A stretch of DNA of 64,000 bases from Selaginella moellendorffii (Eukaryota; Plantae; Lycopodiophyta): the NCBI RefSeq assembly GCF_000143415.4, contig NW_003314298.1, positions 1,641,931 through 1,705,930 on the forward strand. The letters run 5' to 3'. This document shows, piece after piece, positions 8,799 to 63,008 of this stretch (the first letter of the stretch is position 1; each line of letters opens with the position of its first letter). A model generated the notes under the pieces. It saw nothing but the letters and a program-made list of their open reading frames with translations. It was not told the DNA's origin and did no database searches. Both the position numbers and the translations under genes were made by a program.

Positions 8799-10554
8799 AT
8801 GAATGCAGCTTCAAGGATACTTGGAGCTATTGCGCCTCTAGCAGCGGCGCCATTCAGCTCCTCGCGGCAACAAGGTACTACACATTTCCGAAGATCCCAC
8901 ACCATGGAGCTGCATGAGGAGCGCGAGCTCCATCGCAATCTCCTCCGCATGCCACACAGGCCTGCATTCACAGCATCGCACTGCTTCTTGGAGCCGATCT
9001 GTGCCACTCTTCCCTCAAATCCAGATCCCTCGCTCGCAAGCCAGGACTTGGCGCCAGTGTGCAAAGAGGGAAGGCTCTTATCTTCATGGGATATGACATT
9101 CTTGTGGCTGGGCTTGGTCGTGGGAGTTCCAAATTACTATCTCGCTGGAAGCTTGGTGGAGCTCGGGATGGCTTGGTGGCAAGGAATTGGCACAGTCTTG
9201 CTTGCGAATGTGATCACGTACTGCATTCTCGTCTTAGCTGCGCATCCAGGGACCAAGTATGGGATTTCCTTCCCGGTTTTGTTGCGAGCTTCTTTCGGAG
9301 TGTTTGGAGCCAACGTCCCGGCTTTGCTGCGAGGCTTTGTGGCTTGCGGGTGGTACGGGATTGAGACTTGGATAGGTGGTGAGGCGATTTTCAGGATTGT
9401 GGACGTGATGTTGGGGAAGAACAGGTTCTCCAACTTGGCCGAGAGCTTGCCTTTGCTTGGGACTTCTGTTCCCGAGCTTGGGTGTTTTCTCCTCTTTTGG
9501 CTGCTGCAGCTGTGGATCGTGTGGAATGGGATCGAGAGCATTAAGAAGCTGGAGAAGTATAGCGCTCCGGTGCTTATCGTGCTCACGGTGGCCTTGCTTG
9601 TTTGGGCCGTCGTCGCTGCTGGGGGATTTGGAGCAATGCTTGCTGCTTCTTCGGCATTTGGACGTGGTGGTCGCAAGGAAGGCAAGTTCTGGCAAGTTTT
9701 CTTGCCTTCGCTTACAGCAAACATTGGAACGTGGTCGACTTTGAGCTTGAATATCCCAGGTATGGTTCCACCTTTCTTTTCTTTCTCCTCGCATGGTTGC
9801 ATCTCATTTCTTTTTTCTTCTTGCAGATTTTAGCCGGTACACTTATTCGCAGGCTGATCAAATCCTTGGCCAGGCAAGCCTGCCTCTTTTCATGGCCGCC
9901 TTCTCTTTCGTCGGCCTGGCAGTGACATCGGCTTCGGAAGTCATATTCGGACACGCCATATCCAACCCCATCGAGCTCCTTTCACGGATACGAGGTGGCT
10001 TTCTCGTTGCTGTGGTTTCACTCATTGGACTCAGCCTGGCCACTCTCACCACCAACATCGCAGCCAACGTCGTGGCACCGGCAAACGCACTCGTCAACCT
10101 CGATCCAAAGCGCTTCACCTACAGAAGCAGCGGACTCGTTGTGGCAGTCATAAGCGTGTGCTTCCTTCCGTGGAAGCTCCTCCAGACCAGCGAAAGTTTC
10201 ATATACGCTTGGCTAGTCGGCTACTCGGCACTTCTCGGCCCAATCGGAGGTATACTTCTTGCTGATTACTACATTCTCAGGCAACGAAAGTTGGATATTG
10301 ACTCCCTCTATTCCTCGAGCAACACAGGAAAGTACTGGTACTCCAAAGGTGTGAATCCCGCGGCAATGGTTGCTCTTACGGCTGGAATTCTACCCTGCAT
10401 TCCAGGCTTCCTGAGCACCGTCGGCCTACTGAAGCTCAAGATTCCAAGGGTTTTGCTAGCTCTGTATGATGGTGCATGGTTTGTGGGGTTCTTCGTGGCT
10501 GGACTCGTATACTTGACGCTTTCGTGCTTTCCCCGAGTGGAGAGAGGCGTGTAA
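8799..10554 (+). CDS. NCS1: Nucleobase:cation symporter-1 (plastid purine/uracil permease), one intron ~9760-9826
   Basis: Transit-like N-terminus; [47 protein letters not shown]|[25 protein letters not shown]. Confidence 0.92.
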
Positions 10555-10896
10555 GCATATCAACCTCTGTATAGTTGTCAAAACGAGGGAGCTGCGGAGT
10601 AACTTCACAGTGTTGCTTAATGACGCAACTCTATGCTCTCGAGAGCTAGATTTAAAACTTAGGCTTTGTACAATGCAGAATTGTAAAATGGTTTTTTGCA
10701 AGAGAAGTGCCTCGCTCTATAGGACATCTTACCTCAAAGCACTTAGCCCCACTTTTCGCTTTGGAGCCCATATGTCAACAAGCTATATGTAACTTTGGAT
10801 GGGATTGGATTGAATTTGATTGCCAGAAGGGGCAAACACCACACAAGGTTTCTGTTTTTCGAGTCGCTCCTGAGCTCTTGAGCCAAGTGCTCGGCC

Positions 10897-11246
10897 ATGG
10901 CTGATAAGAGTTATCCTTACGGCTATCCTCCTCAAGGTTTGCTTTGCAGCGAGAATCTTTGGGTGACATTTCGTTGGAAGGTTGTAACTCGTTTGTTATG
11001 TTCAGGTTACTATCCACAGCCACCTCCAGTGGCTCCTCCTCCGCAGTATTATGGCCCTTCTCATAGAGACCAAGGCTTTCTAGAAGGCTGGTAAAAGAAA
11101 ATCATGTTTTTTGCTTGTTGGTCTTCTAGTAACTTTTACAGAGACTAAATTTGCTGGGACAAATTTGCAGCTTGGCTGCCCTTTGCTGCTGCTGGTTACT
11201 GGATGTTTGCTGCTGCTGCGGCCCACACATGCTCATTGGATGCTGA
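10897..11246 (+). CDS. Cysteine-rich transmembrane module (CYSTM) protein, 3 exons
   Basis: MADKSYPYGYPPQ|GYYPQPPPVAPPPQYY..QGFLEG|CLAALCCCWLLDVCCCC..., stop 11244-11246. Confidence 0.88.
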
Positions 11247-11658
11247 TGATTCCCAATAGTATATTTGAAGCTCCACATCTGGAGTTTATATGGAGTTTTA
11301 GTAATTTCTTGGCTATGGTAGCGTTGGATCTTGCTGCGCTGCAAAATCATATACATATGCACCAATTATTTCTTATTTTTCGGTAAATTACGCAGATTTT
11401 CTGTGCAGACTTTGGAACCTATATATGATTGTGCTACTGCTCGAATGTGCTTGGCCCTCTGGAGAGGAAAGCTAAGGTTTTTGCTCCACTCACAACAAAA
11501 CGGTCACAATGGCTGGTCAACGTTTGGTGAACGTTGCGGAATATTCGATCGATGATCATGTAAAGGTAAAAGGTAAAAAACCGTTGACCCGGTACAAACT
11601 TGCGAGAGAAGCTTCAAGCTTGCCCTAAAAGGGTAAAAGGCAGGAAAAATTTTAGAAA

Positions 11659-13782
11659 ATGCCGGGCAATGGGCTCCGTGATGCCGCGGCGGGAGGAATT
11701 CTCGCTTGCCAGGGAGTGCAATGCAACTGCAGCCAGAGCGATGGCCTCGAGATCCTCTTCCGCGAGATCCTCAGCCTCCACAGCTACTGGAGCAGCTTCT
11801 TCGGCGCCGAGCTCGACGCTCCGCGGGTAAGGGTTTTTCTCCCCCAGCTGGTTGGAGCCGTGGAATCGGCAGCGCGGCTGGTCCGGAGCTACTCCAGCGG
11901 GCCATGGCTGCTCTCGTCGCTGCGCAAGCTTGAGAATCGAGATGGGTTCTTGCGCGCCGCGGAGATTGTGTGGAGGTATGTGGAAATCGTGCAGCGGCAG
12001 CTCGGAAGCCTGGATTTGACGATTGAGAAGAGGCGGATTTTGGCGAGGCTGGAAGAGAAAGTTGGGATTGAAAAGAAGGTATTGAGATGCTTGCTGGAAG
12101 AGGCGGCTGGCACCGATAGAATGGAACTCAAGTTCAAGGTGGAGGCCGAGAGAAGCTCGCGCATGCACAACTTAAAGCTGTTTGTTCAAGGGGGTAGGAA
12201 GATCATGCTCGACGCTCTCTCGCAGAAGCTGGATTCCACCGAGAGAATCTATTTCATCGATCCAAGGTCGCTGCTCTTGAGTGGAATCGTGTTGGGTGAC
12301 GCGAATTCTCTCGTGCAAAAAGGAAACTGGCTGGGACAGGCAGTGGCAGTGAAGAAGTGTGGCGATGGTTTTCGCTACTGCAGAGAGGCCGGGGTCTTCC
12401 AGCACTTCCAGCCGTCCCACCCGAACGTGATACAAGTCTTGGGAGAGTCCGAGGTTCCGGAAACAAAGGAGAAACTCCTCGTCATGGAGGAGAAGGACAG
12501 CGATCTAAAGAGATACTTTCACTCTTCCGGCCCGATCACGCAACTTCAAGCGGTGGACTTTCTGATCCAGATCGCTGGTGCGATGGTTTACCTGCACGGC
12601 AAAGACGTTTGCTACCGAGACCTCAAGCTCGAGAACATCATGATCGACGTCAAGTATCTGGAGCTCACTTTGGCGGACTTTGGCCACTCAAAACCACGCT
12701 TTGATCCTCTGGGAGACAACACTTGTCCCGTTGGAACTGTCAGCTACATGGCCCCGGAAGTTCTCGCTGGGATAACCTCCGGCCAGGATCCCGGCTATGG
12801 CTTCAGCGTGGACGTCTTCAGCTTTGGGATCGCTTGCTCCGAGATTGTGTCTGGACAGCCTCTGGAGCTGACGGTCCCTCTAACAAGGGAGGAACGAATC
12901 GAGCGATTGCGGCGTGGAGAGAGACCTTCGCTTCCAGAGTCTTGCCACCAGAAGCTCAAGCAGCTCATCACGCAGTGCTGGGATTTTTCGCCGAAGAACC
13001 GACCGACTTTCGAGGTGATCTACGAGAAACTCTGGGAGATCAAAGAAGAGCTCTTGGCCGGAAGCCCCGCTAGCACGGACCCGGGAGAAGCTTCGCCGGC
13101 GTCTGAGATCCAAGCCGCTGGGATCCAAAACTTGGCAATCACTGGAGCAAACACGGTGGGAAGCAAATCGACAGCAACTTGGCAGTACGTGAACGAGACG
13201 AGCTTCTGCGTGGTTGGGTGGCAAAGATACAGGGATCTAGAGTCCGAGGAGCCCCAGCTATCCTGGAAACTCTCGCTCACGTCAGGGACTTCGAGCGATT
13301 ACACCATCACTCCCGACGATCTCGACCGGCACATTGGCGTGATTTGCTTGCCGCTGGCTCTGGTCGATGGGAAGATCGTGCCAAGGCAACAGGCTCGCTT
13401 CACTCACGGAGCTCTCGTCTCGCAAGATCTGGCGATGGCGAGGGAGATGGAGAGGCACTTGAGGAAGGAACACGTTGCTTTCGACATCACCGTCGACCGC
13501 CGGAAGATCAAGCTCAACCTCTGCCACACCGACTACCATCTCGTGTGGCATATGGGAAGCACCAAGAACTTCCGCGGCCAGTTTGTTCGTGGAGACGTGA
13601 GCGTCGAGGTGGTGGGCGATTGCTCCATGGTGATCTCCAAGGCCAGCCAGAGCCAGAGAAGCACGATCGACTTCAAGGATTCTTACAGGAGGAACTTAGC
13701 AGTGCTTCTGATTCGCCATTTTTTGGAATCCAGTCCTTCCCAAAATGGATTGGACCACATTCCAACCCGGAAGACTTGGTAG
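11659..13782 (+). CDS. Intronless 707-aa kinase: MLKL/HeLo-like N-terminal helical bundle + TKL-type kinase + C-terminal Ig(A9)/PH-like module
   Basis: VAVKK, YRDLKLEN, DFG, GTVSYMAPE, DVFSFG. C-terminus has IQNLAITG, YTITPDDLDRHIGVICLP and RRNLAVLLIRHF. Confidence 0.85.
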   Translation: MPGNGLRDAAAGGILACQGVQCNCSQSDGLEILFREILSLHSYWSSFFGAELDAPRVRVFLPQLVGAVESAARLVRSYSSGPWLLSSLRKLENRDGFLRAAEIVWRYVEIVQRQLGSLDLTIEKRRILARLEEKVGIEKKVLRCLLEEAAGTDRMELKFKVEAERSSRMHNLKLFVQGGRKIMLDALSQKLDSTERIYFIDPRSLLLSGIVLGDANSLVQKGNWLGQAVAVKKCGDGFRYCREAGVFQHFQPSHPNVIQVLGESEVPETKEKLLVMEEKDSDLKRYFHSSGPITQLQAVDFLIQIAGAMVYLHGKDVCYRDLKLENIMIDVKYLELTLADFGHSKPRFDPLGDNTCPVGTVSYMAPEVLAGITSGQDPGYGFSVDVFSFGIACSEIVSGQPLELTVPLTREERIERLRRGERPSLPESCHQKLKQLITQCWDFSPKNRPTFEVIYEKLWEIKEELLAGSPASTDPGEASPASEIQAAGIQNLAITGANTVGSKSTATWQYVNETSFCVVGWQRYRDLESEEPQLSWKLSLTSGTSSDYTITPDDLDRHIGVICLPLALVDGKIVPRQQARFTHGALVSQDLAMAREMERHLRKEHVAFDITVDRRKIKLNLCHTDYHLVWHMGSTKNFRGQFVRGDVSVEVVGDCSMVISKASQSQRSTIDFKDSYRRNLAVLLIRHFLESSPSQNGLDHIPTRKTW

Positions 13783-13909: not shown

Positions 13910-15141
13910 TTAATCGCCAGTGTTGGCTGCGTCCATCCTCGGCATCTCTTCAGCAACCTTGGCAACGAAAAAATTCGTTAGAAAAGCGAGCAGGGATTAA
14001 AGCAACTCTTACCAGCTTCTGGAGGGTTTTGCGAGCGTCCATTCTAGCTTTGACCACCTCCGGATTCCAGGGGCAGTCAATGGCCACCGAAAGAGTCGCG
14101 ACCGCCCTGTCCATGAGGCAGCCGCTCCTATACCCGGTGGCTTTCATGGTCGCAAAGTTGACCATCCAATAGTCAGCGGCGACCTCCGTTGACGCGAGCG
14201 TCACCCTCGCCCTCTTTCGCCCGCGCGTCGCCGCCTGGAGTACCACCCGAGCATCTGGCTTGTCGAGCCGCACCATCTTCATGCTGTTATAATTCGTGAA
14301 GAGCACCTTCACCTGGAAAAAAGAACCAAAATCAGTGGCAATGCAAAATACAAGTCAACCACGTTGACCAGCAGGAGGAAATCAAGGACCTCGTCTTGCT
14401 GGATGGTGGTCTCTTCGCCCTCCTTGAGAACAATCTTGATCTCACGGCGATATCCAGTCATCAGGTTGACCTGCTCCATCCTCTCCAGGTCAATCTTGTA
14501 TGGCGTGCCGTTTGGATACTTGGCAGAGGTGAAGGCAGCCTCCAGCTGATCATCGGCCTCACCGCCTTGTTTCTTGCCACCAGCGCGCTTGCTACTCTCG
14601 AGCTTGGACTTCGCGAGCTTGATTCTGAGAGCAATGTCCGGTTCATACTGGACCCATTTCTTATGATTGTCGAGCCACCACACCCCCGGCTTAGTTGGAT
14701 ACGCGCGGCTCTTATTACTCGCTAGCACCTTCACCTGGGAAAAGAAGCAAAACACCCAAAAAGTCAGCGGCAAAGCAAAAAAAAGTCAACTCAAACGAGG
14801 ACCTCGTCTGGCTTGATGGTGGTCTGCTCGCCTTCCTTGAGAACAATCTTGATCTCGCGGCGGTACCCAGACCTCACGTTGACCTGGTGCATTCTCTCGA
14901 GGTCAATCTTGTACGGCATGCCGTTGGGATACTTGGTGGAGTTGTGGAACCCGATCTCCACATCCTTGGCCTCGCCACCTTGTTTCTTACCATCGGCGGG
15001 ATTGCTACTGCTACTATCGAGCTTGGACTTCGCGAGCTTGATGCTGAGGGCGATGTCCGGGGGATACTGGACCCATTGATCATCCTCCCGCCACCACACC
15101 CCCGGCTCCGTGGGATCCGCGCACTCCTTGGTGATACACAT
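13910..15141 (-). CDS. Standalone tandem WWE-domain protein (two near-duplicate WWE exons + one divergent repeat)
   Basis: Exons 15141-14803 and 14734-14390 each encode VWW...WVQY....A..I...YKIDLERM.QVN...GYRREIK. Exon 3 (from 14312) has YWMVNFATMKATGYRSG. A short terminal exon ends at 13910. Confidence 0.8.
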
Positions 15142-15263: not shown

Positions 15264-15992
15264 TTAAGATAAGCTTTTTATCCATGGCATTGCCGTGGCG
15301 AAGAAGTCGCGGAGTTTGTCCGGGGATGGCAGCGACGAGCGCACCAGCGGGTGCTCCCGGATCGCGTCGAGGAGGGCGAGGAATCGCGGGCAGGCGTCGC
15401 GCGATGGCAGCCTCAGGCCCCCGACCTCGACGAGCGATTTGGAGCAGAGCGCGGTGGAGACGAGGACAATGTCAACGAGCCCGAGCTTCGCGCCACCGAA
15501 ATAGGGCGCGCGATTGCTCTTGCGCAGCTCCTCCTCGAGAATGTCGCAGCTGGCGAGGAAATCGTCCTGCCCGGTGGCCCGGAACACCACGTTCGCCGAT
15601 CCGGCAAAGATCTAGAGCAAAAGAATTCCCCCTGTCGATCGCGAGAAGAGCTCAAACTCGATCAACCATACCTTCTTCTCCACGAAATCTGCCCAGAATC
15701 GCTCCTGCGCTCGAGCGTATGGATCCCTGGGGAGAATCTCGTCGCCGCGATCGCGCCACTGCTCGTCGATGTACTCGATTATGACGCTGGATTCCGCGAT
15801 TGGCCTGCCGTTGTGGATCAGCACTGGGACTTTCTTGTGCACGGGATTGGATCGAAGCAGCAGTTCGCCCTTGCTCCTCACGTCCTGCTCGACGCGCTCG
15901 TAGGGGATCGACTTGAGCTCCAGCGCCAGCATCACGCGCATGGAGTAGGGGCTGGACCACACACACAGCAGCCTCACGCTCTCATCCGCCAT
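15264..15992 (-). CDS. Glutathione S-transferase, tau class, 2 exons
   Basis: WSSPYSMRV (catalytic Ser), SNPVHKKVPVLIHNGRPIAESSVIIEYIDE, PYFGG..LGLVDI. Confidence 0.92.
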
Positions 15993-22925: not shown

Positions 22926-24590
22926 TTAGTCCCACATGAGCTGCTGCTGCTGCTGCTGCTGGTAGAGATCCGGGAGCTCGTCTCGGTTGTAGAGGCACGG
23001 GTAGCAATTGAGCTGCGTGGCGGACGGCGAGTTTAGAGCAGGGATCATCTCACCTTGAAACATGAGAGCCAAGTTAGCCGGGTGATTCAAGCCGCTGCTG
23101 TAACTTAAAAGGTTTACAGGCACGGGGATGAGCTCCGGCGGTGGCCCCGGCATCTGCGACTCGAGCTCGAGCAGCGCGTAGAAATCCTCGTCCGGGCACA
23201 CCAATCCACCCCCTGGAAGTTCACCAAAGTGAGAGCTTTATCGCAGCGATCGATCAGATAAAACTAGCAACCAGAGAGCAAGAAAACTGTGAATCAATCG
23301 AAGCAAACTAGAACGAGTGCCCGGAGGATGAAAGAATCAAGAAAACTAGAGAATCAATCACTCGAGAATCTCACGAACTTACGGAAGGTGGTGGCGGTGG
23401 TGGTTTGCTCCACCTGGTCCTCGTCCCACACCTCGAAGAGCCTCAGCTGATAGATTCCTTCCTCGTTGACGGCGCTGGATTTGCCGTAGACCAGCGGCTG
23501 CTCGTCCGGGGAGTGGTGATCGTGATCGCGCTGGGCTTGATGGTCTTGGTGGAACAAGACATCACGCAAGAAGTTGCCGCCGCCGCTCCCACCGCTGTTG
23601 GATCCATAGCTCTCGCTCGTGGATTCCGGCTGGCTTTGCTGCTGGTGCTGCTGGTTGATCTGCTCGAGAAGACGGTGGTGGTGATAAGCAGCGGCAAAGT
23701 CGTCGTGATGATCATCGCCTCGAGCTCCATCGTCGTTGTAGTAGGACGAGGTGGCGATCGAGGAAGGATGGTCGTGGCTGTTCTTGGCGGCGGCGATCAA
23801 GATGCCGCCGCTCTTCCTGCTACTGTTGTTGCTATTGCTGCTCTTGCTGCTGGTGCTACTGCTCACCACCACCTGGTTGTGGTGATGACCAAGATAATGA
23901 TCTTCTTGCGCTTCTTTCCGGTGATGGCCGCCGCGAGCAAGATTGGAGCACAAGTCTTGGAGGTCCGGGGGATAGACCGGCAGCCCCGCTCGCATCCTCC
24001 GCTTGATCCTTGTGTTCCAGTAGTTCTTGATCTCGTTGTCAGTCCTTCCGGGCAACTAGAGCCAAGAAAGAAAGAGAGATGAGATGAGATATCATTCATC
24101 ACAGCATAGAGACAAGGAAAGAAGCAAAGAATGCAAGAAGAGAGAGCTCGAGGGAGAGGGAGAGAAATCGCAAAGAAGAGGAGAGAGCTCGAGAGCTCGA
24201 GAGCTCGAGAGAGATGGAAAAAGAGCTTGCCTGTGACGCCATTCTCGCCCACTTGTTGCCGAGCTTGGCATGGAGCTCGATGATGGTTCTTTCCTCCTCG
24301 GGGGTGAAGGCGCCCTTCTTGAGGTTGGGGCGGAGGTGATTCGCCCACCGCAGCCGGCAGCTCTTGCCGCAGCGCGAGAGGCCGCAGTTCTTCTGGACAT
24401 TGTTCCAGTTGCCCTCGCCGTGCTTGTGAACATAGCCCACAAGAATCGCGTCCTCGCTCGGCGTCCACGGCCCCTTCTTCAATCCCTTCACCGCGCCGCC
24501 GCCTCCTCCCCTTCCTCTTCCCTCCTCGCAGAGCTCCAATGCCACCGCCGCCGCCGCCGCCACTCCTCCTCCTTGCATTGGATCGCCCAT
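22926..24590 (-). CDS. GAMYB: GAMYB-like R2R3-MYB transcription factor, 3 exons (in-frame upstream ATG also at 24701)
   Basis: [36 protein letters not shown]|[16 protein letters not shown] followed by Box 1 RAGLPVYP. Confidence 0.85.
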
Positions 24591-24722
24591 GAGACTCCGC
24601 GGGTTCTTGATCTGCTGGCCTTGAGTTTGAGCGAATATACCCCAACGAGAAGATTCCCAGAAACGAGCACGAATATGCCCACCAAAGAATATGTTTCCCA
24701 TTTGAAATCGATTCCCTCCTCT

Positions 24723-26921
24723 CTACCGCGCCGAGATGGATTCATGGCGCCGTTCCCAGAAGTACATCATCGTGAGCACGGCTGCGTCGCGGGTGGATTG
24801 CGCCGTGAATTTGATCACGCACGAGCTGCCGTCGCTCCTCCGGAGATCGCACAGCATCGGCCCCGCGGGCGAGAGCTGGAGCGGGGCCGGGTGCTCGCGC
24901 CCCTGTGGGGAGTCCGAGAAGGAGTAGCGGACGTTCTTGGGATTTCCCTGCCCCCACCACAGGAGATAGTCCTGGCGATTGATGAAGAGCTTCCCCGTCG
25001 ACTCCCACCACCGCGGGCGCAGCTGGACCACCTTGAAGCTCGCCTGGCCGCCGGCGTAGCTCCTTTCGATCGTCTCCTGGAGCTCGCCGCCAAGCCCAAC
25101 CCTGCTGCTCGACTTCCTGGCCACGATCCCGGGACGCATCGTGGAGCTGAGCGGCAGGCACTGGAGCACCAGCTTCTTCCGGTACTCCGCGGCTGTGATC
25201 GTGCGGGTGAGCTCCGGGATGGAAGAAGACGAGGCCGCGGTGATCACTGGAACCAGCACCGGTGGCTGATGAGCTATTCCACTCTCGCCCTCGCAGATCC
25301 ACTGGCAGAGGACGAACGCGGCACCGTTCACTGCCCGCAACCGGACGCCAAGGTTGCTGCCAACCACCGGCGCTCCTCGCAGCCGCAGCTCCTCCACACC
25401 GGGAAGAACCACGCTGGATCGATCGTCGTGGTGGACGACGCTGACGCTGACGCTGTTGCTGCTGCTAGAGCTCGTCGTGTTGTTGTTGCTCGCGGTGGTG
25501 CTGCTCTCCGTGAGGTTCCACGCCAAGAGCTTCCTCTTGATACTGGCGAGCTCGCGCTCGATCTCCGAGAAGGCGGGGCGGGACTCGGCGTCGCCGCTCC
25601 AGCAGCGCGTAATGAGATCCCGGAGCTCGCCGGGGCACGACGCCGGGAGCTCGGGCCTCTTCCCGGAGTCGACCATCTCCCTGACTTCGTTGATCCCGAG
25701 CCATCGCTTGTCTCCAAACGGCGGTGATCCAGTGAGAACCTCGGAGCACAGCACGCCAAAGCTGTACACGTCCACCTTGCGCGAGTAGCCGCCCAGCGTC
25801 GCGGCCGCGGACGCCATCATCTCGGGCGCCATGTACCGCGGCGTGCCGCGGAGGCTGGTCAAGTCGTTGACCATGCTGTCAAAGCCGGTCCTCGCGATGC
25901 CGAAGTCAGTCAACAGAACGTTGACCATCCGCCGGTCGTTGCCGTCAAAGTCCACCAGGACGTTCTGCGGCTTAAGATCGCGGTGGACGACGCCGTGGTC
26001 GTGGAGGAATTGCGTACCGCGGGCGATCTGGAGGAGCAAGTCGATGGCGAGGTGGGAGGGCGCGCCGCCGCCACCGCCAGCGTCGAGGAAGCGCCGCAGA
26101 TCCATGCGCATGAGCTCCATCACGATCACCGGATCGCCATCGCCAGCGCCCAGGTAGCCGATCACCTGGAGGACGTGGGGGTGTGGCGCGACGAGCGCCG
26201 CCACCTCCCTCTCAAACGTGACGTCGTCGCGCTTGAAGACCTTGACGGCCACCGCCTGTCCCAGCCAGTCCGCGCGGTACACCGTCCCGGACGCGCCCTG
26301 CCCGAGCTTGTCCGCCGGCTCCCACGTCACGTCCGCCCGGCGGAGCATCGGCGGCGCCGCCGTATCGCCGCCGCCCTGCCTCAGCCGCTCCAGCGCGTGG
26401 GCGCTCACCGGGTCCCCCGCCTCGCGGACCCGATGCTCCAGCGCCGCCACCATCTTCTCGCGCTCACGCGCCTCCGCGCCCAGCAGCTCCTCGCGCACGA
26501 AGGATTGGTGCTCGAGGCACTTGTGGCGCAGGATCTCGCCGCCGCCGCCGCCAATCAAAACCCTAGCGCTCACGGCCTCCACGACCTCCTCCAGATCCTC
26601 GAGCACCGCCAGGAATTCGTCGCCGCTGTGGAGCCGCGCCGCCGCCATCTGGAGCCAGCAGCGAGCGCCGCCACAGTCACCCACCAGCTTGAGCGCGCGC
26701 TTGAAGATCTTCACCATCTCCAGCATTGCCGGGCCGGCGCGCGTCACGAATTCGGCCCTGGATCCGCCAGCCTTCCAGGCCAGCACGTAGCCATCGATCT
26801 GGGAGCAGCGGAGGTGGAGGGCGCGGCACTGGCGGCGCCGGATCTTGGCCGCCACGCTCGCGTGCCACAGCTTCTCTGTGAGCGCCGACAGCTCGAAGCT
26901 GCAAGCGATGGAATCCTCCAT
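24723..26921 (-). CDS. Intronless 732-aa kinase: MLKL-like four-helix bundle + active-type kinase + C-terminal Ig(A9)/PH-like module
   Basis: N-terminal IRRRQCRAL and MLEMVKIFKRALKLVGDC..CWL; GQGASGTVY, VAVK, HRDLKPQN, DFG, GTPRYMAPE; C-terminal LPGVEELRLRG, IERSYAGGQASFKV, TRDAAVLTMMYF. Confidence 0.87.
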   Translation of the reverse strand: MEDSIACSFELSALTEKLWHASVAAKIRRRQCRALHLRCSQIDGYVLAWKAGGSRAEFVTRAGPAMLEMVKIFKRALKLVGDCGGARCWLQMAAARLHSGDEFLAVLEDLEEVVEAVSARVLIGGGGGEILRHKCLEHQSFVREELLGAEAREREKMVAALEHRVREAGDPVSAHALERLRQGGGDTAAPPMLRRADVTWEPADKLGQGASGTVYRADWLGQAVAVKVFKRDDVTFEREVAALVAPHPHVLQVIGYLGAGDGDPVIVMELMRMDLRRFLDAGGGGGAPSHLAIDLLLQIARGTQFLHDHGVVHRDLKPQNVLVDFDGNDRRMVNVLLTDFGIARTGFDSMVNDLTSLRGTPRYMAPEMMASAAATLGGYSRKVDVYSFGVLCSEVLTGSPPFGDKRWLGINEVREMVDSGKRPELPASCPGELRDLITRCWSGDAESRPAFSEIERELASIKRKLLAWNLTESSTTASNNNTTSSSSSNSVSVSVVHHDDRSSVVLPGVEELRLRGAPVVGSNLGVRLRAVNGAAFVLCQWICEGESGIAHQPPVLVPVITAASSSSIPELTRTITAAEYRKKLVLQCLPLSSTMRPGIVARKSSSRVGLGGELQETIERSYAGGQASFKVVQLRPRWWESTGKLFINRQDYLLWWGQGNPKNVRYSFSDSPQGREHPAPLQLSPAGPMLCDLRRSDGSSCVIKFTAQSTRDAAVLTMMYFWERRHESISAR

Positions 26922-27734
26922 TTTCCATGGGGATTGGCCAGCGCCGTCAATGCGATCCGTCTTGCCCCCCTCGCCACGATTCTGGCCGCGCTCATCCACT
27001 CGGTCCCCTAGATTTCCTCCTCCCCTTTCCCCGGATTTTGGTGGCTTACCTCACTTGGCAAGAACAAGAGAATGATAGCGCGTAAAGAGTTTTTGCCCTA
27101 GAAAAGCATTGACCTTGTCATACTTTCCAGCGCTGACCGCGTGCCAAGCTGGGGAAATACTTAGATGGACGGTACAGATTCAACTCGATTTTGTCACCTT
27201 TTTTGTTAGAAGCACAGGAAAAATGGTTTTCAACGTCGCGCATCATACTTGGAATCTCCTTGGACTTTTGGCTTGCAAATTCTGGTGGGGTATTTTCAAT
27301 CTGATTTGCCGTTACATAACAAGAGCCAGTGACGATCGACACGAGATCCAAGTGTCACGGAGTGATTCTTCTGTCTCCTCAAATTCCCCCAGGACTTGTG
27401 AAACCAAACGCAGAGAAAAGGCTCAAAAGGCCCGAGGAGGTGTGCATCTGGCGGAGAAGATCCTTTAAGCGCAGTCAGCTAAATTCAATGCAAGTTAATG
27501 GTCTTTTGACCTAAATAAAAATTTGCTCAATCTTTCCTTTTGGATCTGGAATTCAAATAAGCCTTTAGGTGAAGGAGATCGAAAGCAAAGTTAGCGCAAA
27601 TCAAAGCGCCAGTCAACACTAACACGAAAAGGGCTCCAAAGAAGATCACATCCAGTGTGAGCCGGTCAGCGCGGTCAAGGTCTCGAGAAAGGTGGTGGCG
27701 CTTGTCAACGCGAGACGGCAAGAGGCACCAGCGC

Positions 27735-27960
27735 AGATCCTCGACCTTAGTGACAAGCATCGCCCAGATCAGATGGATCCAACGGTGTACTCGTTAACTT
27801 CTACATATCATAAATCATACTGTAAGAACAAAGCGTGATGACAGCAAAAAACAAAGAGAAAGGTTCCTCGACTCGACTTTAGTGACGAGCCTTATCCCAC
27901 TGCCCAAGATCAGATGGGATCCCCAATGGTCTACTCGTAATTTCTTTCACAGATATCATA
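27735..27960. repeat. Degenerate direct duplication (~85 bp unit) downstream of the XRN stop
   Basis: TCCTCGAC..TTAGTGAC.AGC...AGATCAGATGG..C.AATGGT.TACTCGT..TATCATA occurs at ~27738-27812 and ~27865-27960. Confidence 0.6.
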
Positions 27961-28010
27961 CAAAGCTACACACACTGCGAAATGATGAAAGCAAGAACAA
28001 AGAGAAGACA

Positions 28011-60427: not shown

Positions 60428-63008
60428 ACATTTTTCCTATTCAGTATTATCAGCTATAAGCCCCATTGCATCTACAATTTGTTGAAATGTGTCATAATAA
60501 ATATTGTTAACTGTCTTGAGATCTTTGAAAGACTAAGCACCTTTTTTATGGAGTAAAATAAGACATAAATGATATAGTTCAACATTAGATAGCGACACAG
60601 AATATATTCGGGGAATGACATTTCTTGTATGTCGAATTTGCCAATTATGAGTATAAGGGTTAAATGTATAATATAAAGGGATTTCAGGATATGTATATTG
60701 TCTAGCATTTGGGTCATTTATATTTAATTCAAACCATTTTGTTAACAGCATACCATTTTGAGTAGCTCTTTGAAGTGCTATTTGTTTAGAACCTTCTATA
60801 AAATAGACGTTTTGAAAATTTGGAAGATGGATAGGAAAACGAATTATAAGGGTTGAACGACCATGCATTTTAAATTTAAAAAGTCTCCATATTGCCTCTG
60901 AAGTAAATATATAACATGTATTTAAAAATGTTAAGATTTCATCCCAATTTAAAATATTATCAGGTTGTTGGGTTGTTGAATGGATTTCAATTGTAGCACA
61001 ATCATAACCTTTATAAACATATTGAAATAAATACTTAATACTTTTTATAGTAGCACAAATTTCAATATTAATATGAGCATTATATTTTTTACAAAGGTAT
61101 TTATTATAAGGCACTACCCAATGATTATCAATATAACACCCATTTTTTAGAAATGTACAGCCATTATCAGGTCTATAATAATCTGGATATCCATCAACAT
61201 TAAAAGTAGTTTCATAATTAAATTTTTTTGGATAACCTTTTGAGCAAGTGCCATTTTCCATGCAAAAACTATTAGGGTAAAGAGGCCCACATGGACCATA
61301 TATCATATGAGATATAATTATTTTAGAAATTTCAGGTTCATCTTGAGGATCAAGCAATTATGCCGTTATGTATTGGTCAATAGCATTACAGTCTTTAATC
61401 TTGTTTTCATGAGATAAAATCCCTAGAAAGTGACAATGTGGAAAGCCTCTCTTTTGAAATTCAATTACATATATAAAAGCAATACAATTTCCAAAAATAT
61501 GGTTTTTAGTAATATCATTCAAAAATTCTTTAAGCTTGATATGAAATACTCTAGAAACCAAGTCTGGACAATCCTCAGGGCTTTCATTTGGATGTAAGTT
61601 TTTAGAAATTTCTGGCCATTTGGGATTGCATGTAAAAGTAATGAAAAGATCTAGCTTTGAAAAATGAATAACTATAACCATTGCATCTTGATAATTTTGT
61701 TGCATTGCTCTAGGGCCACCCCTAAAACTTGAAGGTAAAATAGCAATCTTGCTTGGATTTATATTTTCATTAGTAGCACGGTTTGCAACATAATCCATAA
61801 GACTAGTATACATTTCAACTCGCAATTGTTTTTGATGAGTGTGATAGTAATTCAAATTATTGCTTTCAACTTTTACATAAGCATCGACAATATATTGTTG
61901 TGTGAGTTTTCCTGCATGTAAAATTTGATCAAAACCAAAGTGTATTGTGTCTCTTATAGATAAACAATATGCATAATATTGGAGCAATGTAATTCGACGT
62001 CCGAAATTAAAAATATTTTTGTGCCAACCTCTATCACCAAAAGGAAATATTAATGGGTAAACCATTGGATCACAATTATAATCAAGTGTTGAGATACATT
62101 TAGAATTGCTTGCAGTTGGATATATACAAATTTCATGACTATGTGGTGGTTCTCCATCATCACTAACAAACACAACAACAACATCATTTGTCCATGGAAC
62201 ATTATAACGTCATGGATCAGTTCCTTCAGTTTTTAATAACATGTAAACACCACATATAGGATAACCTGAAAGCGTAGTAGAACAAATTTCTTCTTGTTCC
62301 ATTTCATACATCATTTTGAGCATATGGGTTAACATGACGAAGGAGAGCATCAAGATGTTTAAATAAGTTTGTCTCACAGCTTGAATTAAAAGGGTTTTGC
62401 TTTCTTATATTTGTAGCTATTAGAGTATCAAGCATATAAAGTTGTCCATAAGTTCGATATTAACCTTTAGAAAGATGTGCTGAAACAATATTATGATATA
62501 TTTGACCATAGATTTTAAAGCAATAAGGACCATGACCTTTTACAATATCAATATTAGAAGACATAGATGCAAAAGCAAGAGCACTATTGTAATGTCTAAT
62601 ATTTGTTTTATTTTTCTTGTAAAGTGAAAGTAAATCAAATGGTAAGGGTGAAATTGGAAGTAATATAACTTGGTTATTCTGGCAACACATTGAAGAGTTT
62701 TCATCTTTAAAATGCAATGTATTATAAAAAGTACAAACAAATGATAAACTACCAATATTAAAATTTATTATATTAAAGTCATTATAAATGTTATGGCTTG
62801 CTAGTGTGGTATTCATGGGTGGAAGTGGTGGATTTAATATTGCTTGATATATGTAATTGTCATAATGACATGCATGTAAGGTTCCAGATGCTTCTGAATG
62901 TCCAACTGATTGCTGTATATAGTTATTATCATGATTAATATTTTGGTGTATAGACTCATTATCATGATTATTTTGAACAGCTATAGTATGTGTATCATGA
63001 TCAATCAT
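60428..63008 (-). pseudogene. Helitron Rep (HUH endonuclease) region, decayed
   Basis: YNSALAFAS, QQYIVDAY, LPSSFRGGPR.MQQNYQDAM, LFITFTCNPKWPEI, EFQKRGFPHCH, VVPYN, HINIE, KYLFQYVYKG. Confidence 0.92.

What the first reader, a model, noticed from the sequence alone, without database searches (positions are those of the whole stretch)
11659..13782. Second, highly diverged copy of the same bundle-kinase-Ig/PH architecture 11 kb away
Seen: same domain order and also intronless, with shared anchors (WLGQAVAVK, HP.V.QV.G, L.LNxxDYxLxW..G..KN.R, R..AVL...F), yet strongly diverged elsewhere and lower in GC. The Gly loop is eroded (LGDANSLV) and HRD is YRD, but K, D and DFG remain. The two genes lie on opposite strands. 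Inference: an old, retained, fast-evolving family, possibly a sensor/helper or kinase/pseudokinase pair.
Basis: partly seen in the sequence, partly recalled or inferred. Interest (0 to 1): 0.75.

Follow-up and report, generated by a model that had tools for sequence, protein, structure and literature searches.

The report
Diverged spikemoss kinase with Ig-PH tail
A spikemoss (Selaginella moellendorffii) gene encodes an intact but faster-evolving second copy of a kinase related to the plant cell-death protein MLKL, ending in a SCAB1-type Ig-PH module; it has lost its ATP-clamping glycine loop, and nothing in the DNA shows that it works as a pair with its neighbour.

Summary
Window 11659-13782 (+) is an uninterrupted 707-codon ORF, and NCBI already annotates exactly this protein for Selaginella moellendorffii. 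It is collinear with the 758-codon ORF at 24723-26999 (-): 27% identity, E 9e-49. The C-termini align on their own (E 2e-9); the N-termini barely do (E 0.02).

A profile of the family places its kinase domain nearest the plant MLKL structures 6LBA and 6KA4. This copy keeps K, E, D, N, DFG and APE. YRD is normal, as in PKA. All three Gly-loop glycines are gone.

Its kinase branch is about 2-2.5 times longer than those of its paralogues. The kinase-fused tails evolve 6-9 times faster than the canonical plant module.

The helical head is short and could not be shown to be an MLKL-type bundle.

The "pair" idea lacks support: the genes are convergent, 10.9 kb apart with three unrelated genes between them, and have the same architecture.

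New here: the Ig-PH (IG_AIR9+DUF7046) module is streptophyte-wide and is also fused to other kinases and to a Ricinus NLR.

The scan had already noted this family at other loci of this genome.

The parts
11659..13782 (+). Whole single-exon gene, 707 aa plus stop (copy A)
   Evidence: The ORF is listed. The exact protein is in NCBI/EukProt (P0066). Coding-type GC3 periodicity starts at 11659 and runs to the stop.
11659..12243 (+). N-terminal all-helical head plus linker helices (aa 1-195); kind unproven
   Evidence: AF2 predicts helices H5-19 through H181-188, but pLDDT is 27-56. Similarity to the heads of B and P0085 is weak and collinear (E 0.02 to 8e-4). No Pfam hit. The language-model search gives only sub-threshold leads to MCAfunc/PUB10_N/DUF7792.
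12256..13059 (+). Protein kinase domain (aa 200-467), TKL type, nearest to plant MLKL kinase-like domains
   Evidence: Pfam Pkinase E 8.8e-36 and PK_Tyr_Ser-Thr E 7.2e-33. PDB matches are DLK at 76 bits and AtMLKL2 (6lba) at 74 bits. The family profile scores 6lba 2e-50 and 6ka4 1.5e-49, above BRAF at 1e-45.
12283..12315 (+). Degenerate glycine-rich loop (aa 209-219)
   Evidence: Alignments and the motif print-out. The Pfam Pkinase match starts only at profile position 44. The other haplotype is identical here.
12352..12354 (+). Beta-3 lysine K232 (VAVK)
   Evidence: Invariant column.
12613..12630 (+). Catalytic loop Y319-R-D-L-K-L (YRD in place of HRD); N326 follows at 12634-12636
12676..12684 (+). 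DFG motif (D340-F-G)
13120..13404 (+). Ig-like (AIR9 A9 / SCAB-Ig type) domain, aa 488-582
   Evidence: Pfam IG_AIR9 is below the cut-off (17.3 bits, E 0.004). AF2 gives strands E9-E103 of the model. It aligns with the SCAB1 Ig half.
13429..13731 (+). PH-like domain (Pfam DUF7046 type), aa 591-691, ending in the R..AVL....F helix
24723..26999 (-). Neighbouring paralogue (copy B) with the same architecture and a canonical GxGxxG/HRD/DFG kinase

Best explanation
SHOWN.
- This is an intact, single-exon Selaginella moellendorffii gene for a 707-aa protein with three parts: a short all-helical head, a TKL kinase domain, and a SCAB1/AIR9-type Ig-PH tail (Pfam IG_AIR9 + DUF7046).
- It belongs to a Selaginella family that also includes the neighbour B and the tandem protein P0085.
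- As a family, the kinase domains are most like the kinase-like domains of the plant MLKLs AtMLKL2 and AtMLKL3.
- Unlike those pseudokinases, this copy keeps K, E, D, N, DFG and APE.
- It alone among the live-looking units has lost all three Gly-loop glycines.
- Its kinase evolves about 2-2.5 times faster than those of its paralogues.

INFERRED.
- It is a retained, functionally shifted paralogue, not a pseudogene.
- It is probably a weak or non-canonical ATP user that acts mainly as a regulated scaffold.
- The Ig-PH tail either takes it to phosphoinositide or cytoskeleton sites, or serves as a fast-evolving integrated bait that mimics SCAB1/AIR9-type host proteins.
- The family's behaviour points to intracellular stress or immune surveillance of the kinase-fusion-protein / MLKL kind, with this copy acting alone or with unlinked partners. 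That behaviour includes expansion, swapping of C-terminal domains, long tail branches, and independent fusion of the same module to other kinases and to an NLR.
For: Gene integrity.
- Intact ORF, exact match to an annotated protein, coding periodicity over the whole ORF.

Tail.
- The AF2 model has pLDDT 86.5 and pTM 0.81.
- Foldseek's top hits are SCAB1 Ig-PH 8y47 (8e-10) and 4dix (2e-9), over 218 columns.
- The profile of the module hits 4dix by sequence at E 1.3e-4.
- The profile search of 1.84 billion proteins found 31 carriers of the module; those scanned with Pfam carry IG_AIR9, most of them also DUF7046.
- This tail gives BLASTP E 8e-18 to P0071.

Kinase.
- Pfam hits and catalytic residues.
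- The family profile's best single-domain PDB matches are 6lba and 6ka4, with shared WLG, VMELM.KDL and LQIA.GM.YLH signatures.
- The Selaginella units form a clade (99/98). Branch lengths: A 1.75, B 0.70, P0085 unit 1 0.84, dead unit 2 3.09.
- This copy has more private changes in 12 of 12 relative-rate tests, p 0.016-0.45.

Constraint.
- Amino-acid differences between the two haplotypes are 2.0%. That is similar to B (2.3%), P0085 (1.4%) and the non-kinase Ig-PH gene P0078 (1.7%).

Surveillance reading.
- Tail end branches are 2.0-2.9 against a median of 0.32, and against 0.70 for Selaginella's own non-kinase Ig-PH protein.
- The module is also fused to RLCK-type kinases in Erigeron, Tagetes and Rhododendron, and to an NB-ARC-LRR protein in Ricinus.
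- MLKL-type proteins with live kinases are immune components in cereals (PMC10951266; bioRxiv 10.64898/2026.08.07.743466).
Against: - I have no transcript or protein evidence for this copy.
- The RefSeq model on the other haplotype (XP_024531133.1, 550 aa) starts at M155 and so lacks the head. The head may be broken or unused there.
- The head is short, modelled at low confidence, and hits no MLKL-associated Pfam family.
- An Asp at the second Gly-loop position may abolish nucleotide binding, so the protein could be catalytically dead despite its K/D/D triad.
- The faster rate, the lower GC3 than B and the eroded loop are also what a decaying duplicate would show.
- The immune reading rests on analogy and on family behaviour. 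No pathogen or cell-death data exist for any lycophyte member.
- The PDB holds few plant TKL kinases, so 'nearest to MLKL' is relative to solved structures only.
- For this copy alone, DLK (76 bits) and 6lba (74 bits) tie.
Confidence: 0.45

Rival explanations
1. Copies A and B work as a dedicated pair. A, with its damaged kinase, would be the sensor or pseudokinase partner, and B, with a canonical kinase, the executor. The model is NLR sensor/helper pairs or the kinase-pseudokinase units of tandem kinase proteins.
For: - The genes are linked within 15 kb, and the same pair occurs on both haplotypes with consecutive RefSeq numbers XP_024531132 and XP_024531133.
- A has a degenerate Gly loop while B is canonical.
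- The same family contains a fused live-plus-dead tandem, P0085.
- MLKL proteins do act in genetically linked pairs in wheat (bioRxiv 10.64898/2026.08.07.743466).
Against: - The orientation is convergent, not head-to-head, with 10.9 kb and at least three unrelated genes between the two.
- Both proteins have the same head-kinase-Ig-PH layout, so no integrated-domain asymmetry exists.
- A keeps K/D/D. It is closer to the live unit of P0085 (38%) than to the dead one (28%), and it does not group with the dead unit in the tree.
- GC3 differs strongly (0.70 vs 0.87), which argues against a shared regulatory and compositional history.
- Presence on both haplotypes is trivial for allelic scaffolds.
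Confidence: 0.12
2. Copy A is a decaying duplicate. It is still open by chance or through recent relaxation, has no function of its own, and is on the way to becoming a pseudogene.
For: - The Gly loop is lost, with a five-residue irregularity.
- The head is shortened.
- The gene model on the other haplotype is truncated to 550 aa and differs by a 3-aa indel.
- Its branch is the longest among the live-looking kinase units.
- The Pfam IG_AIR9 score is below the cut-off.
Against: - The copy has diverged about 70% in sequence from B (dS saturated), yet 707 codons stay open.
- Every catalytic and structural kinase anchor survives.
- The tail still folds confidently into Ig-PH and keeps all eight invariant and most near-invariant columns of a 27-sequence plant alignment.
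- Haplotype amino-acid divergence (2.0%) is no higher than for B or for the non-kinase Ig-PH gene.
- Its branch (1.75) is well short of that of the truly dead unit 2 of P0085 (3.09).
Confidence: 0.15
3. Copy A is an ordinary localised signalling kinase with no surveillance role. The Ig-PH tail is simply a targeting domain, like that of SCAB1, that places the kinase on phosphoinositide membranes, actin or microtubules for housekeeping or developmental regulation.
For: - The tail is a SCAB1-type Ig-PH.
- SCAB1 binds PI3P and phosphatidic acid and regulates actin (abstract of PMC10730221).
- AIR9 A9 domains belong to a microtubule-associated protein (abstract of PMC3488599).
- AtMLKLs associate with microtubules (bioRxiv 10.1101/681015).
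- A SCAB1-kinase complex has been crystallised (8y47).
Against: - A targeting domain under housekeeping constraint should not evolve 6-9 times faster than the canonical module of the same plant lineage.
- Earlier scan notes report that the family swaps C-terminal domains and duplicates units in this genome. I verified this only for P0085.
- The same module sits at the end of an NLR in Ricinus, the classic position of an integrated decoy.
Confidence: 0.2

Closest known systems
Arabidopsis MLKL1-3 (plant MLKL, DUF1221-kinase; structures 6LBA, 6KA4; bioRxiv 10.1101/681015)
   Same: The kinase-like domain gives the best single-domain PDB sequence match to the family profile (2e-50 and 1.5e-49). 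The WLG, VMELM.KDL, LQIA.GM.YLH and GERP motifs are shared. The match to 6ka4 runs about 50 residues upstream of the kinase into the brace region. The layout is a helical region followed by a kinase fold.
   Different: AtMLKLs are pseudokinases: the aligned 6lba and 6ka4 chains read R for the beta-3 K, HGD or HGE for HRD, and GFG for DFG. This copy keeps K, D and DFG. The DUF1221 head is not detectable here by Pfam. The C-terminus is an Ig-PH module, not a serine-rich region. Plant MLKLs were described for seed plants.
Pm13 and R3AK: cereal MLKL-type kinase fusion proteins with catalytically intact kinases (PMC10951266; bioRxiv 10.64898/2026.08.07.743466)
   Same: A helical head, a brace and a kinase that keeps its catalytic residues. 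They are the nearest functional precedent for an 'MLKL with a live kinase' acting in immunity.
   Different: The Pm13 kinase belongs to the RLK/Pelle LRR_8B group, not to a TKL/AtMLKL-like group. Their heads are recognisable MLKL_NTD / MCAfunc / Cbl-N domains. They have no Ig-PH tail. Their function is proven genetically; nothing is proven here.
SCAB1 Ig-PH domain (PDB 4DIX, 8Y47) and AIR9 A9 domains
   Different: SCAB1 joins this module to actin-binding and coiled-coil regions, not to a kinase. Identity is only 16-18%. This copy scores below Pfam's cut-off for IG_AIR9 and gives no DUF7046 or SCAB hit of its own.
Neighbour copy B (24723-26999, P0068) and the tandem paralogue P0085 (XP_024525978.1)
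   Same: The same head-kinase-Ig-PH order. The kinase units form one clade (99/98). The heads share a Cys motif. Monophyly of the three tails is not rejected (p-AU 0.2).
   Different: Identity is 36-38% in the kinase (B and P0085 unit 1 share 46%). The Gly loop is lost only here among the live-looking units. The head is shorter. GC3 is 0.70 against 0.87. In the free tree this tail sits with an unnamed 800-aa non-kinase protein (P0071, 91/86), not with B and P0085.
Angiosperm kinase-Ig-PH fusions (Erigeron XP_043612288.1, Tagetes KAK1417735.1, Rhododendron XP_058206117.1) and the Ricinus NLR-Ig-PH fusion (XP_015576965)
   Same: A kinase or an NLR followed by IG_AIR9 + DUF7046 at the C-terminus.
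   Different: Those kinases are RLCK / RLK-Pelle type, 23-24% identical to this one. They have no helical head. Their tails are slowly evolving and nest within angiosperm clades, so the fusions are independent.

Membership tests
Eukaryotic protein kinase superfamily (Pfam PF00069 / PF07714) | Profile match above the curated cut-off | tested here: met
   Pkinase 124.1 bits (cut-off 31.7); PK_Tyr_Ser-Thr 114.4 bits (cut-off 23.1).
Eukaryotic protein kinase superfamily (Pfam PF00069 / PF07714) | Catalytic residues: beta-3 Lys, alpha-C Glu, HRD Asp, catalytic-loop Asn, DFG Asp, APE | tested here: met
   K232, E243, D321 (as YRD), N326, D340, and APE at 365-367.
Eukaryotic protein kinase superfamily (Pfam PF00069 / PF07714) | Glycine-rich loop GxGxxG | tested here: not met
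   Anchored on W224, the three Gly positions read L, D and S. The Pfam match starts at profile position 44.
Classical pseudokinase (lacks at least one of beta-3 K, HRD D, DFG D) | Loss of one of the three catalytic residues | tested here: not met
   All three are present. Only the Gly loop is degenerate, so activity is uncertain but the definition is not fulfilled.
Plant MLKL (kinase fold plus an N-terminal 4-helix bundle annotated DUF1221, MCAfunc or Cbl-N, as defined operationally in bioRxiv 10.64898/2026.08.07.743466) | N-terminal four-helix bundle of the HeLo / MLKL_NTD / DUF1221 / MCAfunc kind | tested here: inconclusive
   No Pfam hit at E <= 1 for the head of A or of B. AF2 predicts all helices but at pLDDT 27-56. 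Foldseek returns kinases only. The language-model search puts both heads nearest MCAfunc / PUB10_N / DUF7792 clusters, at scores of 0.76-0.79, which is below the trusted level.
Plant MLKL (kinase fold plus an N-terminal 4-helix bundle annotated DUF1221, MCAfunc or Cbl-N, as defined operationally in bioRxiv 10.64898/2026.08.07.743466) | Kinase-like domain specifically related to the AtMLKLs | tested here: met
   The family profile scores 6lba at 175 bits and 6ka4 at 172 bits, above BRAF at 159. For this copy alone, 6lba (74 bits) ties with DLK (76 bits). The comparison covers solved structures only.
Plant MLKL (kinase fold plus an N-terminal 4-helix bundle annotated DUF1221, MCAfunc or Cbl-N, as defined operationally in bioRxiv 10.64898/2026.08.07.743466) | Catalytically dead kinase-like domain and serine-rich C-terminal region (DUF1221 clade, bioRxiv 10.1101/681015) | tested here: not met
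   The catalytic triad is retained. The C-terminus is a folded Ig-PH module.
SCAB1/AIR9-type Ig-PH module (Pfam IG_AIR9 PF23197 + DUF7046 PF23080) | Pfam matches above the cut-off | tested here: not met
   IG_AIR9 scores 14.8-17.3 bits against a cut-off of 27.5. There is no DUF7046 hit.
SCAB1/AIR9-type Ig-PH module (Pfam IG_AIR9 PF23197 + DUF7046 PF23080) | Homology to bona fide carriers of the module over both domains | tested here: met
   BLASTP of this tail gives P0071 8e-18, P0072 3e-12 and P0078 5e-12 over about 200 residues. The profile search returns 31 carriers. All eight invariant columns of the 27-sequence alignment are kept.
SCAB1/AIR9-type Ig-PH module (Pfam IG_AIR9 PF23197 + DUF7046 PF23080) | Two-domain Ig + PH fold as in SCAB1 (4DIX) | tested here: met
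SCAB1/AIR9-type Ig-PH module (Pfam IG_AIR9 PF23197 + DUF7046 PF23080) | Phosphoinositide / phosphatidic acid or cytoskeleton binding | not testable with these tools
   Needs lipid-overlay, liposome or co-sedimentation assays.
Genetically paired immune receptors (sensor/helper) | Head-to-head or immediately adjacent arrangement, with an integrated domain in only one partner | tested here: not met
   The genes are convergent, with 10,940 bp and at least three unrelated genes between them. The two have identical architecture.
Kinase fusion / tandem kinase immune receptors of cereals | Kinase joined to a non-kinase integrated domain | tested here: met
   Kinase plus Ig-PH in a single ORF. This is a descriptive criterion only.
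Kinase fusion / tandem kinase immune receptors of cereals | Demonstrated disease-resistance function; extended beta-finger motif (Poaceae-specific, bioRxiv 10.1101/2025.07.14.664643) | not tested
   The function cannot be tested in silico. I did not examine the beta-finger.

The most novel reading that the evidence does not exclude
The Selaginella head-kinase-Ig-PH family may be a lycophyte relative of the plant-MLKL (DUF1221) kinase lineage that still has catalytic residues, that is, the state before that lineage became a pseudokinase. On this reading, copy A is caught part-way along the same road: Gly loop lost first, K/D/D still in place.

In parallel, the SCAB1/AIR9-type Ig-PH module may be a recurrent integrated bait across land plants. 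It is fused to MLKL-type kinases in Selaginella, to RLCKs in Asteraceae and Ericaceae, and to an NLR in Ricinus. That would imply that pathogens commonly target cytoskeletal Ig-PH proteins.
Probability: 0.2. Interest if true: 0.75.

Novelty: new variant of a known kind. Interest (0 to 1): 0.5.

Why it matters
Plant MLKLs and kinase fusion proteins are a fast-moving topic in plant immunity, but they have been described almost only in seed plants and cereals. A lycophyte family would give an outgroup for asking how the plant MLKL pseudokinase arose. This family joins an AtMLKL-like but catalytically equipped kinase to a folded Ig-PH module, and it has members that range from canonical (B) through Gly-loop-less (this copy) to dead (P0085 unit 2).

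The side result also gives a concrete, testable candidate for a new class of integrated domain: the same Ig-PH module has been fused independently to other kinases and to an NLR.

Taken alone, this copy is one more diverged member of a family that the scan has already met several times in this genome.

Tried and rejected
- **Word-based homologue searches.** I ran the whole protein, the region 480-707, and the three-sequence profile A3. They returned only the allelic protein P0001 plus generic kinases, and did not even return B or P0085. They therefore say nothing about family size.
- **P0002 (Eleusine).** It looked like a relative at E 7e-61, but it is a generic Raf-like kinase that matches only in the kinase domain.
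- **DNA of the other haplotype.** I could not check the head on the other haplotype or compute a haplotype dN/dS.
- **dN/dS between A and B, per domain (NG86).** dS is 1.3-1.9, which is saturated, and GC3 differs strongly between the copies. The ratios (head 0.60, kinase 0.41, tail 0.77) are not trustworthy.
- **Upstream exon.** I searched 10400-11800 for an exon that could supply the missing first helix. Nothing scored above noise.
- **Fold of the head.** The AF2 model of aa 1-470 has pLDDT 27-56 in the head, and Foldseek returned kinases only. The ESM Atlas structure rows were generic helical bundles with TM <= 0.54.
- **Two-sequence C-terminal profile against the PDB.** No hit. Only the 27-sequence profile reached SCAB1.
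- **Ordinary Raf-like MAP3K.** Rejected, because the family profile prefers the AtMLKLs and because of the architecture.
- **YRD as a defect.** Rejected, because PKA-type kinases carry YRD.
- **Literature.** I found no paper on DUF7046, on kinase-Ig-PH fusions, or on MLKL-type genes in Selaginella or other lycophytes. The Selaginella genome paper PMC3166216 is not held.
- **Allelic window in the scan's notes.** Look-ups by words and by sequence were blank.
Full report
**What is there.** The window holds an uninterrupted 707-codon ORF at 11659-13782 on the + strand. Its ATG is the first codon but one after an in-frame TAG at 11653-11655. Coding-type composition (GC3 > GC1 > GC2) begins exactly at 11659 and continues to the stop. 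The 900 bases upstream show no such periodicity.

The exact 707-aa translation is already an annotated protein in NCBI and EukProt (P0066), so the CDS is a single exon. The closest database protein, P0001 (XP_024531133.1, Selaginella moellendorffii, 550 aa), is 98% identical. It lies on a different scaffold, next to XP_024531132.1, which is the counterpart of the neighbour gene. I take it to be the second haplotype of the assembly.

The genome is therefore the spikemoss S. moellendorffii. Earlier notes of this scan say the same.

**The comparison with the neighbour.** The second gene is at 24723-26999 on the - strand: 758 codons from a GTG, or 732 aa in NCBI's model from M27.

| Comparison (A vs B) | Result |
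|---|---|
| Full length | 27% identity over 726 columns, E 9e-49 |
| C-terminal thirds alone | E 2e-9, 22% identity |
| N-terminal parts alone | E 0.023 |

The quoted anchors are present, apart from one spacing slip: R..AVL is followed by F after four residues, not three.

GC is 56.1% against 67.1%, and GC3 is 0.70 against 0.87. The neighbour is the unusual one, because other genes in the window have GC3 of 0.58-0.64.

The genes are convergent, with their 3' ends 10,940 bp apart. Between them lie two ORFs that each carry a WWE domain (Pfam E 5e-9 and 4e-7). A glutathione-transferase-like ORF and the start of an adenylosuccinate synthetase gene also lie there; I named those two by eye.

**The kinase domain.** Pfam places a protein kinase domain at aa 226-459 (Pkinase E 8.8e-36). 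The following residues are all present:
- the beta-3 lysine (K232);
- the alpha-C glutamate (E243);
- the catalytic-loop Asp and Asn (D321, N326);
- DFG (340-342) and APE (365-367);
- the alpha-F Asp (D385) and the alpha-H/I Arg (R448).

YRD in place of HRD is not a lesion. PKA and many AGC kinases carry YRD (my own knowledge).

The real defect is the glycine-rich loop. Anchored on the following Trp, the GxGxxG of the neighbour corresponds here to L-G-D-A-N-S, so all three glycine positions are lost, with an Asp at the second. The Pfam match starts only at profile position 44. The other haplotype is identical in this stretch.

By the usual K/D/D definition this is not a pseudokinase. Normal ATP clamping is nonetheless doubtful.

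**Which kinases it resembles.**
- For this copy alone, the best PDB sequence matches are DLK/MAP3K12 (76 bits) and the plant MLKL AtMLKL2, 6lba (74 bits). BRAF follows.
- For a profile of A, B and P0085, the best single-domain matches are 6lba (2e-50, 175 bits) and AtMLKL3, 6ka4 (1.5e-49, 172 bits). BRAF scores 1e-45. The only higher total comes from an EGFR chain that matches twice at under 100 bits each.
- The alignments share conspicuous motifs: WLG before beta-3, VMELM.KDL, LQIA.GM.YLH and GERP. The match to 6ka4 runs about 50 residues upstream of the kinase, into what is the brace in MLKL.

In those same alignments the AtMLKL chains show R for the beta-3 K, HGD or HGE for HRD, and GFG for DFG. 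This agrees with their description as pseudokinases (bioRxiv 10.1101/681015). The Selaginella proteins keep the catalytic residues.

This comparison covers only solved structures. A plant-wide TKL tree is still needed.

**How fast it evolves.** In a tree of kinase domains, the Selaginella units form one clade with support 99/98.

| Kinase unit | Branch length from the family node |
|---|---|
| Copy A (both haplotypes) | 1.75 |
| Copy B | 0.70 |
| P0085, first unit | 0.84 |
| P0085, dead second unit | 3.09 |

Pairwise identities agree: A-B 36%, A-P0085 unit 1 38%, B-P0085 unit 1 46%, A-P0085 unit 2 28%. In Tajima relative-rate tests with six outgroups, this copy has more private changes in 12 of 12 comparisons, by ratios of about 1.3 to 1.9. 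Only some comparisons are significant (p 0.016-0.45).

dN/dS between A and B is not usable, because dS is 1.3-1.9 and so saturated.

Amino-acid differences between the haplotypes:

| Protein | Differences | Percent |
|---|---|---|
| Copy A | 11 of 550, plus a 3-residue indel | 2.0% |
| Copy B | 17 of 732 | 2.3% |
| P0085 | 16 of 1141 | 1.4% |
| P0078 (non-kinase Ig-PH protein) | 10 of 592 | 1.7% |

So this copy is not an outlier.

**The tail.** Pfam gives only a sub-threshold IG_AIR9 match (E 0.004-0.025). I therefore searched a profile of the two C-termini against 1.84 billion representative proteins. It found 31 proteins at E <= 1e-3.

Those I scanned carry IG_AIR9 (PF23197), most of them followed by DUF7046 (PF23080). 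They come from across the streptophytes: Klebsormidium, Spirogloea, Sphagnum, Physcomitrium, Riccia, Selaginella, Psilotum, Welwitschia, Amborella, Eucalyptus and others. This copy's tail matches them directly, for example P0071 at E 8e-18 and 29% identity. That is better than its match to the tail of its own neighbour, at E 9e-7.

Structure evidence for this copy's tail:
- The AlphaFold2 model of aa 480-707, built on a 27-sequence alignment, has pLDDT 86.5 and pTM 0.81. It shows a beta-sandwich, a helix, and a second beta-sandwich capped by a C-terminal helix.
- Foldseek's top hits are the Ig-PH domain of the actin-binding protein SCAB1: 8y47 at 8e-10 and 4dix at 2e-9, over 218 columns.
- The 27-sequence profile also reaches 4dix by sequence, at E 1.3e-4, in both halves.

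The tail of this copy is thus a SCAB1/AIR9-type Ig-PH module.

**The tail in evolution.** In a tree of 28 modules, the three Selaginella kinase-fused tails have end branches of 2.91 (A), 2.46 (B) and 2.03 (P0085). The median is 0.32, and Selaginella's own non-kinase protein P0078 has 0.70.

The free tree puts A with the unnamed 800-aa protein P0071 (91/86) and B with P0085 (94/89). Long branches make these positions unsafe, and a single clade of the three kinase tails is not rejected (lnL difference 1.5, p-AU 0.2).

The same module is fused elsewhere:
- to RLCK-type kinases in Erigeron and Tagetes, which are sisters in the tree;
- to an RLCK-type kinase in Rhododendron, which sits in another clade;
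- to an NB-ARC-LRR protein in Ricinus, which carries three A9 domains plus DUF7046.

Those kinases are only 23-24% identical to this one, so the fusions are independent. I found no paper that mentions DUF7046 or such fusions.

**The head.** The first 195 or so residues are predicted all-helical, but at pLDDT 27-56. A fold comparison is therefore meaningless, and Foldseek returned kinases only. No Pfam family matches the head of A or of B at E <= 1. DUF1221, MCAfunc and MLKL-type models are among those that do not match.

The head aligns weakly but collinearly with the heads of B and of both P0085 units, around a shared Cys-x6-Cys-Ser motif and a WL motif (E 0.02 to 8e-4 in a four-sequence database). 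It has only 16 residues before that motif, where the paralogues have about 30-57. The first helix is therefore shortened. No upstream exon that could supply the missing helix was found.

The protein-language-model search put the heads of both A and B nearest the same three plant clusters (MCAfunc, PUB10_N, DUF7792). The scores were 0.76-0.79, which the tool rates as leads only. MCAfunc is one of the three annotations by which a recent preprint defines plant MLKL heads (bioRxiv 10.64898/2026.08.07.743466), so the lead points the expected way. I count the 'MLKL-like bundle' as unproven for this copy.

The RefSeq model on the other haplotype starts at M155 and omits the head. I cannot tell whether that reflects a lesion there.

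**The pair idea.** Nothing in the sequence singles the two genes out as a functional pair.
- They are convergent, separated by unrelated genes, and have the same three-part layout.
- Known sensor/helper pairs are typically adjacent, and differ in which partner carries the integrated domain (my own knowledge of NLR pairs).
- This copy keeps the catalytic triad and is closer to the live unit of the tandem paralogue than to its dead unit.

The idea remains possible, since MLKL-type proteins do work in linked pairs in wheat, but it is untested.

**What it most likely is.** I read this as a retained, functionally shifted paralogue in a Selaginella-expanded family of AtMLKL-related kinases with Ig-PH tails.

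Against simple decay:
- the ORF is open despite saturating divergence from B;
- every kinase anchor survives;
- the tail is confidently folded and keeps the invariant columns of the plant module.

The loss of the Gly loop and the intermediate branch length suggest weak or non-canonical nucleotide use, with a mainly regulatory or scaffolding role. This step is inferred.

The tail could be a targeting device. SCAB1 binds PI3P and phosphatidic acid (PMC10730221, abstract), and AtMLKLs associate with microtubules. It could instead be an integrated bait. I lean to the second for three reasons: the tails are fast-evolving, the family shuffles C-terminal domains, and the module also ends an NLR. The evidence for domain shuffling comes from earlier scan notes on other loci; I verified only P0085. 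This step is analogy, not proof.

**Earlier notes of the scan.** The same family was noted before in this genome:
- the neighbour B (s1-334453);
- tandem versions (s1-408405, s1-355730, s1-398767);
- single versions (s1-418248, s1-410847);
- an EDC4-tailed version (s1-431093).

I tested the SCAB1/AIR9 lead directly on this copy, and I confirmed the tandem protein P0085. One note's statement that the kinase-Ig-PH combination occurs only in Selaginella needs amending. With a different kinase family and no helical head, it also occurs in three angiosperms.

**Limits.**
- The word-based protein search missed even known paralogues.
- No eukaryotic genome DNA other than the window was reachable.
- I did not obtain a family census, transcripts or haplotype dN/dS.

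Noticed in passing
window 14312-15141 (-): Two adjacent ORFs each carry a WWE domain (Pfam E 4.9e-9 and 3.8e-7). They lie just downstream of copy A on the opposite strand and are probably exons or repeats of one WWE-domain gene. A further ORF at 13950-14312 has no family.
   Followed up: partly
window 15264-15992 (-): ORFs that by eye look like the N- and C-terminal halves of a glutathione S-transferase. Not scanned.
   Followed up: no
window 24000-28000: Copy B sits in a GC-rich island (window GC 0.58-0.62, gene GC3 0.87). This is far above the neighbouring genes (GC3 0.58-0.70), including its own paralogue 11 kb away.
   Followed up: partly
P0001 (XP_024531133.1), allelic to window 12121-13782: The RefSeq model of the other haplotype starts at M155 of this ORF and so lacks the helical head. 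It also differs by a 3-residue indel (MHNL to I at aa 169-172) and 11 substitutions, including D316G just before YRD.
   Followed up: partly
P0073 (Ricinus communis XP_015576965, 2033 aa): An NB-ARC plus RPS2-type LRR protein that ends in three AIR9 A9 domains and a DUF7046. This is an NLR with an integrated Ig-PH module (Pfam).
   Followed up: partly
P0089 (Erigeron XP_043612288.1), P0074 (Tagetes KAK1417735.1), P0087 (Rhododendron XP_058206117.1): Angiosperm RLCK-type kinases fused to the same IG_AIR9 + DUF7046 module. The two Asteraceae tails are sisters and the Rhododendron tail sits in another clade, so there were at least two further independent kinase fusions.
   Followed up: partly
P0071 (800 aa, from Logan assemblies, unnamed): The nearest relative of copy A's tail (29% identity, E 8e-18; tree support 91/86) is a non-kinase protein of unknown species. 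Its first 587 residues match no Pfam family.
   Followed up: no
window 60533-62173 (-): Two long AT-rich ORFs that by eye resemble the helicase-like protein of a Helitron-type transposon. Not scanned.
   Followed up: no
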